A stretch of DNA of 64,000 bases from Trichosphaerium sp. ATCC 40318 (taxonomy: Eukaryota; Protista; Tubulinea): assembly GCA_038496445.1 (NCBI GenBank), contig JALMLS010000216.1, forward strand, positions 558,001 through 622,000, written 5' to 3'. A model generated the notes under the pieces. It was not told the origin of the DNA, did not search any database, and saw nothing but the letters and a program-made list of their open reading frames with translations. Shown here one piece after another: positions 1 to 4,212 of this stretch. Each line of letters starts with the position of its first letter. Position 1 is the first letter of the stretch. Both the position numbers and the translations under genes were made by a program.

Positions 1-1271
1 CTAATATGTATTTAGGGAAGAAGAAAGTTCTTATTAAAACGAAATATTCCAGTTTGAACCCAAAGGATTGGAAGGTAGCGTAGTTCAGTACAATTAAACG
101 TTAAAACACCTTTTGACGCATTTCTAGGTACTGACGCATGGTTTTCTAGCGTTTTTGCATGGTGTTTTAAAAACGTTCCCTGCTATAACAGGAACAGACG
201 GCTCAGGCATCGTAGAAGCCGTAGGCGTAGATTGCAAACGAATTAAAGGTACGACCAACTTTCAATTTACAAGTAACTTCAAGTATCTTTTCAGTACTAA
301 CTCAAATCTGTAGTTGGTGATGAGGTTATGTATGGTGGTTTTCAAAAAGTAGATGGTCGTTGTATGGCAGAGTACGTCGAGTTACCTGAAGATGATGTTG
401 AGATAAAGCCATCTAACTTGACATTCCAAGAAGCTGCTTGTCTCCCTGTTGTAAGTTGGGGTTTTTTCTCGATTTTTTAATGTTACGATCACGTGATTAA
501 TTTCTTTTGTTTTTCATGTTTGTAGTCTAATTTTAATTTGTTTAGATTGGTATTACGGTCATTCAAGCGTTTATGTATACTGCAAAGTTAAAAAAAGGTG
601 ATCGCGTTTTAATTATTGGCGGAAGTGGAAGTGTTGGTTCATGTGCTACCCAACTTGCTAAGAGTATGGGTTGTCATGTCACTTCTATATGTAGCGGTAA
701 GAATAAAGAGTATTGTGAAAGTATTGGCGCGGACGATGTAATAGATTACCGTAAAGAAGACTGGAAAGTAACGCAAAAAGTACGGATTGGTTGCTTGTTT
801 TCTTGTTGACATTTCTTTGTCAGAAAGCAGGGTATAATCTAGTCTTTGACTGTGTCGGGTACAATTGGGATACTATCAAAAAGAATGCCATTGCTTCCAG
901 TAGTGGACAATACATCACAATTGTTGAAGAAAAAGGCATGAAAACAATAGGTAAGCTTAAGACAATCATCCACAAAAAAGAAAGTGCTAATGCTATGCGT
1001 TTAAGGCAACTTTTTGAACCATGCAGCAACTGTTCATTGGCGAAGTAATCTCGGCGGCATTGGCGCCCCAGGATTCCATCACGTAATGATGAAAGGTACA
1101 AGAAAGCGTTGGACAGATCTCCGAGAATTAGCAGAGAAGGGTATTTTAAAACCTGAAATCGCAAAAGAATACGAACTTGATGATATCATTGAAGCTTTTG
1201 ATGACTGTATGAACAATAAGATGAGAGGAAAACTGGTGATCAAAACGAACAGTAGTGACGATGAGGTTTAA
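1..1271 (+). CDS. NAD(P)-dependent MDR-family oxidoreductase (RTN4IP1/quinone-reductase-like), 5' partial, multi-exon
   Basis: Spliced exons give SSLNPKDWK, GTDGSGIVEAVG, AEYVELPE..KPSNLTFQEAACLP, VLIIGGSGSVGSCATQLAK, GADDVIDY and C-terminal RGKLVI; GT-AG introns. Confidence 0.9.
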
Positions 1272-1572
1272 AAGAAGAATGTAGTTGGTAGTTAATAAAT
1301 TGGTGTCTATTAATTAAGAAGCAATGACCGCAAATTTTATAGGAAAACGCACTGTGCTATTAATTTGTCCTGTTCTCTTATAAATGCCCGCTGATCATAT
1401 CCTTCACAAGCAGATATCAAGGAAGTTCATTAAGAAAAATAACTAGCGAGATTCATAGGTTTACGAGGCAACGATGATTGGGCTAAACGGTGGCTTTCAT
1501 TAATGAAAAACAACAATACAGACAGTTTGGGAACATAATTTATTGAGGTGCCTTCAAGCGATAAATAACTGT

Positions 1573-3440
1573 TTAAAACAATACGCTGAGGATTACAATA
1601 ACAAGAGCAAAGGAAACTTGCAACATAGTAGAGGAAGAAGGTGCAAGAGATGGTTCAGGTGTAGGTGCAACAGATGTTGGTGCAACAGTTGTTGGTGGTT
1701 TAGCACAGTTATCAGCAGGATCAGCTGTGGTAGGACCAGGGATACCAGTCAAACTCATTGAGGTGACTTCTGCGGCAGCAACATTGAATGTTTCAATGAT
1801 AGTCATGTTAGCAGGGTCAGACAAGTCAACCTTGTAGATGACAGCAGCGCCTCCAGTGTTCTAAAAGAAAGATAAGTAAATATGCTTTCAAAACTACTTG
1901 AAATTGACGGTAAAGTCGCCGACGTGAAATGTGAATCAAAAGAGATCGGTTACGTACTTCAGCTACCCAAGCTTCATCTTCGCCAACGACGAGGTTCTCT
2001 CTTTCATCTCTGAATTTACCAGTACCGCAAGTACCGTTAGTGAAAAGACGGAGAGATCCGAGTTGAGTCCAGTCAGATACTTTGAAAACGTATAGGGTGC
2101 CATCAGGAGCCAATACGACCAATTGATCTTGTGTTTTGCGGTTCCACTATTGAGTATTGTTAGAACAAAAACAAAACAAGGAAATCTTTTTTTTATACTT
2201 ACCTTGTAACCACATGGGTACATATCAGCGTTTGTCCATGGAAATTCCATGAAAGAACCAGCTGGTAGGGCATCTGGGACAGCAGCAGCAATGCGCAAAA
2301 ATCCTTGACCTGAATGGAAAGTTAGAAAACGTAAAGATGCAAAAAGAGCAAGTGGACGTACCAGTTGCGTTAGATGTGGTGTCATCTTCTTCAAGGGTGT
2401 AATCAGCAACGAAATATTCGCCGAATGGACTAGGCTTGATTTCTAGTGGTCTGAAAGCAGTTGTAGATTCAGGGTAAGGAAGTCTCTTGCTGGAGAAAGA
2501 CATGGCGACTGGGTCGTATGTGACAACAAGGAAACCGCCTGGACTAGCAGAGTTGCCTTGGTTTTTTTCACATCCGAACAAATGGTTGTTACCGATAACA
2601 GCACCACCGTGATAATCACTACAGTGAGAATCTTCGTCGGTCAAATTGGCAATAACTTTGACTTCTTGGTCTGCGCAGGAGAGTAAGAAAAAAAAGTTTC
2701 TGAAAAAAATCAAAAAAAAGAAGTAGTGCAACTGTACCAGTATGAGTAAAGACACGGACGCCCTTAACACCTACACCATCACCACTACGCTTACTGGTTT
2801 CCTCTTCAGGAACAGTACTAAAGTTTTGTCAGTCAAAAAAAAAAAAAAAAAAAAATCTTGAGGAAAGATTTCAGCACGTACGAAATAAAGTGGCAATTTG
2901 CAGCAGCAATGGCGAAACCGTGATGGTGTTCGACATCAGAAAACTGGATTGTGTGAGGGTCCGCTTCAAGAAGTTCATCTTCTTCAATAGCGAGAACGTA
3001 TGAATCTTCTTCAGCTGCAGCACCTGAAGCTTCTTCTCCGTCAAAGTGAAGTACAATCCAACCGAAGTGAGATTCGAAATGAAATGCTAAAGCGTTTGTG
3101 AGTGGGAGGTTTTTACGAGCGTAAAAATTTATAGCGTACGTTCAGGACCATCAAAAACTCTGTTAATAGATGGTGTTACATCAGAACCGTTTTTACGGTA
3201 ACCGCCGTCAATAATATAAGCTTTGTTGCCTACGGTTAAACCACCGAATACGCCATCTTCAGTTGTATGGGTAAGACCGTTTTCTGCTTCTACTGCAAGG
3301 GTTGTTTCAACCTTTGTAGCGGCGTCGATCACAAGAAGGTTTGCTGATGCCTTCAATGACACCAAAAGCTTTGGTCTGGCGGCGCCAAGAGCTGCAGACA
3401 CAAAAATAAGAGCAAAAAGCAAAGCGAGTTTCGTTGCCAT
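1573..3440 (-). CDS. Secreted, GPI/TM-anchored AztD-like (zinc metallochaperone) beta-propeller protein, multi-exon
   Basis: Signal peptide MATKLALLFALIFVSAALG; motifs GPEPFHFESHFGWIVLHFDG, EHHHGFAI, CSDYHGGAV..FGC; Pro/Thr stalk and hydrophobic C-terminus (VSFALVIVILSVLF*). Confidence 0.65.
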
Positions 3441-4212
3441 GGTGTTGGTGCTTGCGATAAAAAAGGTTGTATGACGCAAAAGGACATGAGAAATTATGTG
3501 GAACACGCTCTCAGACGCTCCTGTTGCGTTTATATGGGCCAGGGTAGCCCTGGAATATTTTTCACGTAACAATTTTTTTGGGGAACAGGAACATTTAGGG
3601 AGGTTTTTGGGCAACGCGTTAACTTCTCTCGACGCATAAATAACGCCTGGTGACACAAAAAAGCATAGTTTGCGAAGTGCGGTTGCTATCGATTAAAGAA
3701 GAAAGAGCGCATCTGCACAATCTCATGCTTTATATCTATCCGCTATTGCATTCCGTTATATTACATGTAATTTGAGCTTATACTTCAAGAAACAAATTTG
3801 TTTTAGGCGCGAACATGTTCTAACAGAGTCTACAATAAGAAAAAAGAGCGTATTATCCAGTTCTCGCGAAACGCACCAAATAAACGGATTTGGTGCGTTT
3901 GTAGACAATTCTAACGCGTATACAGTTATAAGTAAAGTAAATCTAGTACGTTTTGTTATTCTCTGTATTTACAGAATCAAACCTTTTTTAGTGCCCAGTC
4001 TCCTATTCTTTTTGTTCAAGTGGTACATTGCATTACGCGGTTATGTCATTTGGAAACCCGCGAATTACTTCGGTAGCCACTGTATACGCGCGTTCGTTAG
4101 AACGTAGAGGTATTTCTTTTGTTCTTAATCAGGTTTAACTACTGACAAAAAAAAAGACGAATGGAAATTACAGAATTGCATAGTGCAGTACTTTACGCCA
4201 AATTATTTTAAA

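What the first reader, a model, noticed from the sequence alone, without database searches (positions are those of the whole stretch)
1573..3440. Bacterial AztD-type zinc chaperone turned into a cell-surface anchored eukaryotic protein
Seen: His motifs PFHFESH..FDG, EHHHGFAI and CSDYHG..FGC, plus an N-terminal signal peptide, a Pro/Thr stalk and a terminal hydrophobic GPI-like signal. The gene has multiple introns and C-ending codons like the phosphatase gene, which suggests high expression. Known: periplasmic AztD beta-propellers carry P.H...H...F.DG, .HHG.A and C..HG..GC motifs and bind Zn. Inference: an old horizontally acquired surface metal-capture protein that may define an undescribed Zn/Fe uptake route in this lineage. 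Comparison with diatom iron-starvation surface beta-propellers would be informative.
Basis: partly seen in the sequence, partly recalled or inferred. Interest (0 to 1): 0.7.

Follow-up and report, generated by a model that had tools for sequence, protein, structure and literature searches.

The report
Surface-anchored AztD-like zinc-binding propeller in amoeba
An amoeba-like protist expresses a seven-exon gene for a relative of the bacterial zinc-handling protein AztD, fitted with an export signal, a sugar-bearing stalk and a probable lipid anchor. It keeps the zinc site in the central pore but has lost the site bacteria use to hand zinc on, so it is probably a surface metal binder, not a chaperone.

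Summary
A 7-exon gene on the minus strand (3440..1573, 492 aa) is real, and spliced transcript contigs from three studies confirm all six introns.

It is an AztD-family homologue:
- Exons 2, 4 and 6 each match bacterial AztD-like profiles in collinear order (E 4e-6, 3e-12, 1.5e-8).
- The profile of its relatives hits the AztD crystal structures (E 7e-55).
- The model of its closest bacterial relative superposes on AztD (TM 0.83-0.89).

The pore "site 1" His triad (H103, H156, H216) and the disulfide (C212-C229) are kept with the exact AztD spacing. The "site 2" hairpin (HGDHxD), which passes zinc to AztC, is missing. "Chaperone" is therefore not supported; a surface zinc binder or receptor is.

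The signal peptide, Pro/Thr stalk and GPI-like tail are present. No GPI predictor was available.

Its nearest relatives are two intron-bearing genes on uncultured eukaryote contigs with the same signal-plus-tail layout. A separate large clade exists in diatoms and a chlorarachniophyte. I found no paper on eukaryotic AztD homologues.

Horizontal origin is plausible, but its direction and the number of events are unresolved. The joined protein was never sent to search or fold tools.

The parts
3441..3458 (-). 5' UTR; transcript start near 3458
   Evidence: The full-length cDNA contig ends at 3458 with a loose end I recognise as a template-switch oligo.
3140..3440 (-). Exon 1: start codon, signal peptide (3440-3381), first blades, and the degenerate site-2 hairpin region (3206-3171, residues 79-90 GGYRKNGSDVTP)
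   Evidence: Weak but collinear hhalign match to the bacterial profile.
2882..3086 (-). Exon 2: PFHFESH..HFDG and EHHHG motifs. Site-1 ligands are H103 (3081-3079) and H156 (2922-2920).
   Evidence: NCBIfam AztD E 1.1e-3. hhalign to the bacterial AztD-like profile gives 87% probability, E 4e-6. Alignments.
2738..2817 (-). Exon 3: short linker and strand (residues 169-195)
   Evidence: Splice junctions confirmed; model.
2362..2670 (-). Exon 4: C212 (2623-2621), site-1 ligand H216 (2611-2609), C229 (2572-2570), and the conserved GGxLVVTYDP..FSSKxLxYP block
   Evidence: Exhaustive search. hhalign gives 97.6% probability, E 3.4e-12. The spacing C+4=H and C+17=C is identical to PdAztD C214/H218/C231.
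2203..2309 (-). Exon 5: residues 299-334, including C331
1958..2146 (-). Exon 6: conserved blade 'VVLxxDGxLxVxxxxDWTxLGS', including C374
   Evidence: hhalign gives 95.5% probability, E 1.5e-8. Junctions confirmed.
1573..1860 (-). Exon 7: last blade, Pro/Thr/Ser stalk (1737-1630), GPI-like signal (1638-1576: SSS, short spacer, hydrophobic end), stop codon (1575-1573)
   Evidence: No family match for the stalk and tail.
1546..1572 (-). 3' UTR as far as the transcript contig reaches

Best explanation
The gene encodes a secreted, glycosylated and probably GPI-anchored cell-surface protein. Its ectodomain is an AztD-family beta-propeller. It keeps the family's invariant core: three histidines (H103, H156, H216) that in AztD hold one zinc ion plus a water in the central pore with nanomolar or better affinity, and the neighbouring disulfide (C212-C229). 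It has lost the protruding hairpin site from which bacterial AztD hands zinc to the transporter protein AztC. Inferred mechanism: the propeller captures Zn2+ (or a similar divalent metal) at the outer face of the plasma membrane. Because it is lipid-anchored in a phagocytic cell, it is carried into endosomes and phagosomes, where acidification would protonate the histidines and release the metal for uptake by membrane transporters. Shown here: gene structure, expression, homology, ligand conservation, loss of site 2 and the anchoring signals. Inferred: the fold of this particular protein, zinc binding, GPI attachment and the capture-and-release cycle.
For: - Gene and splicing.
- Exon-level homology by reference only: NCBIfam AztD; 12 of 13 hits belong to the AztD-like family; E 4e-6, 3.4e-12, 1.5e-8, in collinear order.
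- The family profile hits AztD crystal structures 6cmk (7e-55) and 6ck1 (6e-44).
- In a local script, the joined model aligns to bacterial P0008 over residues 21-424 (28% identity, 114 bits) and to eukaryotic L011 (149 bits).
- The P0008 model (pLDDT 95) superposes on AztD with TM 0.83-0.89 and rmsd 2.2-3.1 A.
- Across 76 family members, site-1 histidines are present in 73-75 and the disulfide in 74. Site 2 is kept in only about 48 and is lost in the amoeba protein.
- Zinc context of bacterial relatives: P0008 lies between two cobW genes, a ZnuA gene and an S18 gene, which I take to be a Zur-type paralogue (my inference). There are fusions to ZnuA and structural neighbours fused to ZinT, ZnuA and AztB.
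- The roles and affinities of the AztD sites come from PMC6689063.
- Signal peptide, five N-glycosylation sequons, stalk and terminal hydrophobic tail.
- All three variants seen between runs are synonymous (with my codon mapping).
Against: - No fold was computed for the amoeba protein itself, and no metal binding was measured.
- The function of site 1 is unknown even in bacteria; it does not transfer zinc to AztC (PMC6689063).
- No zinc transporter or COG0523 gene lies beside the gene.
- No expression data under zinc limitation are available.
- The GPI call rests on sequence rules, not on a predictor.
- The protein sits on a long branch (1.7-2.7 substitutions per site), so its function may have drifted.
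Confidence: 0.55

Rival explanations
1. It is a surface zinc enzyme. The invariant His3-plus-water zinc site in the pore would be a catalytic centre (a hydrolase, perhaps a phosphatase), and the family's chaperone hairpin would be an accessory that many members can lose.
For: Site 1 is invariant in 73-75 of 76 members, while site 2 has been lost repeatedly. In AztD the site-1 zinc has three histidines and a solvent ligand, the geometry typical of catalytic zinc (my knowledge). A diatom homologue is labelled 'Alkaline phosphatase' in UniRef; that is a database label, not a test.
Against: No activity is reported for AztD. The bacterial gene contexts concern zinc homeostasis. The pore is narrow, about 5.5 A. 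I could not trace the phosphatase label to any experiment. The described atypical algal phosphatases have Asp/Glu-rich motifs, not His motifs.
Confidence: 0.15
2. It is an adhesion or recognition receptor. The propeller face would bind a ligand (prey surface, matrix or another cell), and the metal would be only structural.
For: Beta-propellers on stalks with GPI anchors are a common receptor layout. From memory, Dictyostelium PsA and csA have similar Pro/Thr stalks and tails. The hand-off site is lost. The protein is on a long branch.
Against: The parts under the strongest conservation are exactly the metal ligands and the adjacent disulfide. No ligand-binding surface is known for this family.
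Confidence: 0.12
3. It withholds or buffers zinc in the phagosome as part of bacterial killing or metal detoxification, rather than feeding the amoeba.
For: GPI-anchored surface proteins enter phagosomes. The protein has a high-affinity site with no transfer site. Amoebae manipulate phagosomal zinc (my knowledge, not checked here).
Against: One site per molecule is a small capacity. No expression data link the gene to feeding.
Confidence: 0.1
4. It is bacterial contamination or a dead relic.
For: The family is overwhelmingly bacterial.
Against: The gene has six spliced introns of host type and an intact ORF. cDNA from three studies covers it, and all three variants between runs are synonymous.
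Confidence: 0.02

Closest known systems
AztD periplasmic zinc metallochaperone (Paracoccus denitrificans, Citrobacter koseri; PDB 6CK1, 6CMK, 6N01; NCBIfam NF038015)
   Same: Homologous along the whole propeller. It has the same pore His triad (site 1), the same disulfide with identical spacing, and an extracytoplasmic location.
   Different: It has no site-2 hairpin (HGDHxD) and no C-terminal His ligand, so there is no evident hand-off to an AztC-type binding protein. It is eukaryotic, with six introns, a signal peptide, a Pro/Thr stalk and a GPI-like tail. Identity to its closest bacterial AztD-like relative found here (P0008) is only 28% (no direct comparison with crystallised AztD was made), far below the curated family cut-off.
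Bacterial AztD-like proteins without site 2 (for example P0008, from a metagenome)
   Same: It shares the loss of the hairpin while keeping site 1 and the disulfide. P0008 is the best bacterial match (28% identity, 114 bits).
   Different: P0008 has a LysM-type N-terminus and lies in a cobW / ZnuA / S18 zinc island. The amoeba gene has no such neighbours.
Unannotated eukaryotic AztD-like genes on metagenome contigs (L008; L011/L012)
   Same: These are the nearest relatives (26-28% identity, 120-149 bits; clade support 96). They have a signal peptide and a C-terminal hydrophobic GPI-like tail, short introns with GTACG or GTGCG donors, and a shared extra cysteine pair (C165 and C449 in the amoeba protein).
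   Different: They have no long Pro/Thr stalk. Intron positions are not shared. L011 still has site 2 (HGDHVD). The organisms are unknown.
Diatom / chlorarachniophyte AztD-like clade (for example Phaeodactylum B7FTS9, and proteins of Cylindrotheca, Fistulifera, Epithemia, Amphora and Amorphochlora; all 'hypothetical')
   Same: These are eukaryotic surface-anchored members of the family, with a signal peptide and a GPI-like tail or transmembrane helix. Site 1 and the disulfide are invariant. Site 2 is lost in several subclades.
   Different: It is a separate, well-supported clade (100) with extra cysteines. Its short forms have His/Asp-rich linkers, and its long forms carry an added domain plus a transmembrane helix.
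Diatom surface metal-uptake proteins ISIP1 (propeller, siderophore endocytosis), ISIP2a (phytotransferrin) and ZCRP-B (NikA-like, zinc/cobalt responsive)
   Same: The working logic would be the same: an anchored extracellular metal-binding protein that concentrates a scarce metal at the surface and is internalised.
   Different: ZCRP-B is NikA-like and ISIP2a is unrelated in sequence. Homology to ISIP1 could not be tested because no ISIP1 sequence was at hand. The Phaeodactylum member of the clade lacks the CACGTG[TC]C motif that I recall from iron-responsive diatom promoters.

Membership tests
AztD family (broad sense) | Sequence homology along the propeller to crystallised AztD | tested here: met
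   Exons 2, 4 and 6 match a bacterial AztD-like profile in collinear order. That family's profile hits 6cmk and 6ck1 at 7e-55 and 6e-44. Exon 2 hits NF038015 at E 1.1e-3.
AztD family (broad sense) | Eight-bladed beta-propeller fold of this protein itself | not tested
   The joined spliced protein has no reference and was not folded. Proxy evidence: the model of its closest bacterial relative, P0008, superposes on AztD with TM 0.83-0.89.
AztD family (broad sense) | Site 1: three pore histidines (Pd H124, H167, H218) | tested here: met
   H103, H156 and H216 fall in the same alignment columns, which are invariant in 73-75 of 76 members.
AztD family (broad sense) | Conserved disulfide (Pd C214-C231) | tested here: met
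   C212 and C229 have the same C+4=His and C+17=Cys spacing.
AztD zinc metallochaperone (strict sense, NF038015 equivalog) | Site 2 hairpin H99-G100-x-H102-x-D104 plus a C-terminal His, the site that transfers zinc | tested here: not met
   The hairpin is replaced by GYRKNGSDVT, with no histidine. The C-terminus continues into the stalk.
AztD zinc metallochaperone (strict sense, NF038015 equivalog) | Score above the curated cut-off (400 bits) | tested here: not met
   Only exon 2 scores, at 17.8 bits. Even the bacterial relatives found here score 110-152 bits.
AztD zinc metallochaperone (strict sense, NF038015 equivalog) | Genetic link to an aztABC/znuABC transporter and Zur control | tested here: not met
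   Nothing of that kind showed in the ORF lists for the ~10 kb around the gene; these were read by eye, not scanned against Pfam. A eukaryote need not cluster such genes, so this weighs little.
AztD zinc metallochaperone (strict sense, NF038015 equivalog) | Zinc binding and direct transfer to AztC | not testable with these tools
   This needs purified protein.
GPI-anchored surface protein | N-terminal signal peptide | tested here: met
   MATK, then a 14-residue hydrophobic core, then GAA (Kyte-Doolittle mean above 2 over residues 1-21). This was rule-based; no predictor was run.
GPI-anchored surface protein | Small omega-site residues, a short spacer, and a hydrophobic stretch that ends the protein | tested here: met
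   SSS(472-474)-TMLQ-VSFALVIVILSVLF, with the stop directly after and no cytoplasmic residues. The clade relatives L008 and L011 have the same layout.
GPI-anchored surface protein | Actual GPI attachment | not testable with these tools
   This needs PI-PLC release or mass spectrometry.
ISIP1 (diatom iron-starvation propeller) | Sequence homology to ISIP1 | not tested
   No ISIP1 sequence was obtainable. Only its described architecture could be compared.

The most novel reading that the evidence does not exclude
Eukaryotes hold at least two unrecognised branches of the AztD family: a small one (this amoeba plus two uncultured protists) and a large one (diatoms and a chlorarachniophyte). Both would act as lipid- or helix-anchored surface zinc receptors that deliver the metal by endocytosis and acid release. 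That would be a zinc counterpart of phytotransferrin-type iron uptake, built on the family's enigmatic 'site 1', whose role is still unknown in bacteria.
Probability: 0.25. Interest if true: 0.75.

Novelty: new variant of a known kind. Interest (0 to 1): 0.55.

Why it matters
AztD has been described only in bacteria, as a helper of an ABC zinc importer (PMC6689063). Here the same propeller is found in eukaryotes, rebuilt as an anchored surface protein. It keeps precisely the metal site whose function is unknown and drops the one that is understood. This gives a simple system for asking what site 1 does. It also points to candidate zinc-acquisition proteins in amoebae and, through the parallel clade, in diatoms, where zinc scarcity is ecologically important. 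It is also a clean case of a bacterial-type gene that has been fully domesticated, with introns, a secretion signal, a stalk and an anchor.

Tried and rejected
- Pfam found nothing for any exon. PDB sequence searches with single exons found nothing useful; a 0.13 hit to Aip56 came from its His-tag.
- The amoeba's own full-length protein or a close relative could not be retrieved. The exhaustive search with exon 4 gave no hit above 48% identity. Three word searches seeded with the exons returned only distant kin.
- The genome-contig scan returned only seven Poribacteria loci, because the search patterns were narrow. The first attempt failed for lack of conserved columns.
- ZCRP-B as the diatom counterpart was rejected, because it is NikA-like.
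- PhoAaty and EHAP1 phosphatases as the source of the 'Alkaline phosphatase' label could not be shown. The motifs described for PhoAaty are Asp/Glu-rich.
- ISIP1 identity of the diatom clade could not be tested. No supplement was held. The Phaeodactylum member has a shorter tail than described for ISIP1 and lacks the promoter motif I recalled. No paper names its accessions.
- A single eukaryotic clade (amoeba plus algae) is not rejected (AU p 0.755) and not shown either (polytomy).
- There is no paralogue in the window.

Full report
**1. The gene**

- Reading the minus strand of 1500-3500 gives a clean seven-exon model: 3440-3140, 3086-2882, 2817-2738, 2670-2362, 2309-2203, 2146-1958 and 1860-1573.
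- The six GT..AG introns are 52-97 nt long. Four begin GTACG, one GTACA and one GTAAG. The ORF is 492 aa.
- Transcript contigs from runs of three studies skip exactly these six introns.
- One 1546-nt contig covers 3458..1546. It carries at 3458 a loose end that I recognise (my knowledge) as a cDNA template-switch oligo, so the 5' UTR is about 18 nt.
- The three differences seen between runs (1997, 2027, 2977) all fall on third codon positions and are synonymous by my mapping.
- G|GTACGT is four-fold enriched across the window (15 found against 3.7 expected), so the introns are of host type.
- Intron GC is 0.33 against 0.45 for the CDS. C-ending codons are only mildly raised (0.25 against 0.13-0.21).

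**2. What it is, using exons by reference only**

- Pfam is blank.
- NCBIfam gives one weak hit: exon 2 to AztD, E 1.1e-3.
- An exhaustive HMMER search with exon 4 against 1.84 billion representatives gave 13 hits, the best at E 6e-7.
- Twelve of the 13 belong to the AztD-like family. Eight of the ten scanned hit NF038015 (E down to 1.3e-44; one is fused to a ZnuA-type binding protein), P0003 aligns with the family without an NCBIfam hit, and P0011-P0013 were placed by alignment only. The thirteenth (P0005) is a Kelch-type false hit.
- A profile of these proteins hits the AztD crystal structures 6cmk (7e-55) and 6ck1 (6e-44).
- hhalign of single exons against a bacteria-only alignment places them in collinear order:

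| Exon | Template columns | E-value | Probability |
|---|---|---|---|
| 1 | 10-72 | 0.07 | weak |
| 2 | 106-163 | 4e-6 | 87% |
| 4 | 201-278 | 3.4e-12 | 97.6% |
| 6 | 318-372 | 1.5e-8 | 95.5% |

- The stalk and tail exon matches nothing.

**3. The joined model, in local scripts only**

- The joined model was built from window.fa and never sent to a search or fold tool.
- It aligns to the bacterial protein P0008 over residues 21-424 (28% identity, 114 bits).
- An AlphaFold model of P0008's propeller has pLDDT 95.4 and pTM 0.92.
- That model superposes on all AztD chains at TM 0.83-0.89 and rmsd 2.2-3.1 A. The next folds score 0.5-0.65.

**4. The metal sites**

- According to PMC6689063, PdAztD binds zinc at two sites.
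  - Site 1 lies in the pore and uses H124, H167, H218 and a water.
  - Site 2 lies on a hairpin and uses H99, H102, D104 and the C-terminal H408.
  - Only site 2 transfers zinc to AztC, and the role of site 1 is unknown.
  - A disulfide joins C214 and C231.
- The numbering in the printed 6ck1 alignment matches the paper.
- Through the alignments, the amoeba residues are:
  - H103 in PFHF, equivalent to H124;
  - H156 in HHHG, equivalent to H167;
  - C212, H216 and C229, equivalent to C214, H218 and C231, with identical spacing.
- In 76 family members, the site-1 histidines are present in 73-75 and the cysteines in 74.
- The hairpin HGDHxD/H is kept in about 48. It is lost in the amoeba protein (GYRKNGSDVT), in bacterial P0008 and in several algal subclades.
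- The protein is therefore a site-1-only member of the family.

**5. Targeting**

- Residues 1-20 form a classical signal peptide.
- There are five N-glycosylation sequons.
- Residues 439-474 are a Pro/Thr/Ser/Ala stalk.
- The protein ends SSS-TMLQ-VSFALVIVILSVLF, with no residue after the hydrophobic stretch. This is the layout of a GPI signal.
- No GPI predictor was available, so attachment is inferred.
- The six cysteines fit three extracellular disulfides. C331 and C374 align with a second cysteine pair in relatives. C165 and C449 are shared only with the two nearest eukaryotic relatives.

**6. Relatives and origin**

- Word searches found a large clade of unannotated proteins in diatoms (Phaeodactylum B7FTS9, Cylindrotheca, Fistulifera, Epithemia, Amphora, a Bacillariaceae MAG) and in the chlorarachniophyte Amorphochlora.
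- These algal proteins carry signal peptides and either GPI-like tails or a transmembrane helix.
- The Atlas model of the Phaeodactylum protein is structurally closest to bacterial propellers fused to ZinT, ZnuA or AztB (TM 0.75).
- Two fragment hits, P0003 and P0004, lie on eukaryotic metagenome contigs beside lipin, PRMT5, kinase and EGF genes.
- Reconstructed locally, both are intron-bearing genes of 460 and 467 aa with a signal peptide and a hydrophobic tail. L008 and intron 2 of L011 have GTACG donors; intron 1 of L011 has a GTGCG donor.
- They are the best matches to the amoeba protein (120 and 149 bits) and form a clade with it (SH-aLRT 96).
- That clade is apart from the algal clade (100). 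The deeper branching among the two eukaryotic clades and the bacteria is a polytomy.
- Before those two genes were added, an AU test did not reject placing the amoeba with the algal clade (p 0.755).
- Horizontal origin from bacteria therefore remains the simplest reading of the patchy eukaryotic distribution. The donor, the age and the number of events are not resolved, and bacterial sampling here is thin.
- Intron positions are not shared with L008 or L011.

**7. Function**

- Bacterial context supports zinc. P0008, although it lacks site 2, sits between two cobW (COG0523) genes, a 758-aa ZnuA gene and an S18 gene, which I take to be a Zur-type paralogue.
- The AztD paper reports ZnuA, Fur/Zur and CobW neighbours for the family.
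- The amoeba gene has no such neighbours. Its left neighbour looks by eye like an MDR-type oxidoreductase gene (not scanned).
- My best account is a surface zinc-binding propeller that captures metal at site 1 and releases it after internalisation into acidic compartments.
- The rivals are a His3-zinc enzyme, a receptor or adhesin, and a phagosomal zinc sink.

**8. Literature**

- Forty papers mention the string AztD. None concerns a eukaryotic homologue, and the only one that also mentions diatoms uses AZTD for a test dust.
- ZCRP-B is NikA-like.
- ISIP1 has a similar architecture, but I could not obtain a sequence to compare.

**9. Organism**

- Earlier notes of this scan call it an amoeba or amoebozoan with insertional mitochondrial RNA editing. 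I did not verify this.

**10. Step left out**

- All such calls used exon references or database proteins.

Noticed in passing
L001-L007 (for example L001:5898-7070) and P0006: In Candidatus Poribacteria and a SAR202 bacterium, the AztD-like propeller is part of a single ORF of about 760-790 aa together with a ZnuA-type binding protein. In P0006 the ZnuA halves flank the propeller, as if it were inserted in place of the flexible loop.
   Followed up: partly
P0012-P0060, P0067, P0075 (diatoms, Amorphochlora): This is a large unannotated algal clade of AztD-like surface proteins in two layouts. Short forms have a His/Asp-rich linker and a GPI-like tail. Long forms have an extra alpha/beta domain, a transmembrane helix and a short tail, and have mostly lost site 2. 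One member is labelled 'Alkaline phosphatase' in UniRef, and I could not trace the basis for that label.
   Followed up: partly
L008:4471-5909 and L011:4534-6092 (= L012): Two uncultured eukaryotes carry the nearest relatives of the amoeba gene. Their introns are short (56-80 nt) with GTACG or GTGCG donors, like this genome's introns, which may mean they are related organisms.
   Followed up: partly
window 155-1271 (+): The left neighbour, convergent with the AztD-like gene, looks by eye (not scanned) like a multi-exon MDR-type (quinone oxidoreductase / zinc-type alcohol dehydrogenase-like) gene. Its stop at 1271 lies about 275 bp from the 3' end of the AztD-like transcript.
   Followed up: no
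window 2824-2864: Intron 2 holds a run of about 24 T (minus strand), at which assembled reads appear to be cut.
   Followed up: no
window, whole: GGTACGT occurs 15 times against 3.7 expected from shuffles, in line with an unusual G|GTACGT splice-donor consensus in this genome.
   Followed up: partly
window 1997, 2027, 2977: Transcript contigs filed under three different coded organism labels differ from the window at only three positions, all synonymous. This fits the same species or close strains under different names.
   Followed up: no
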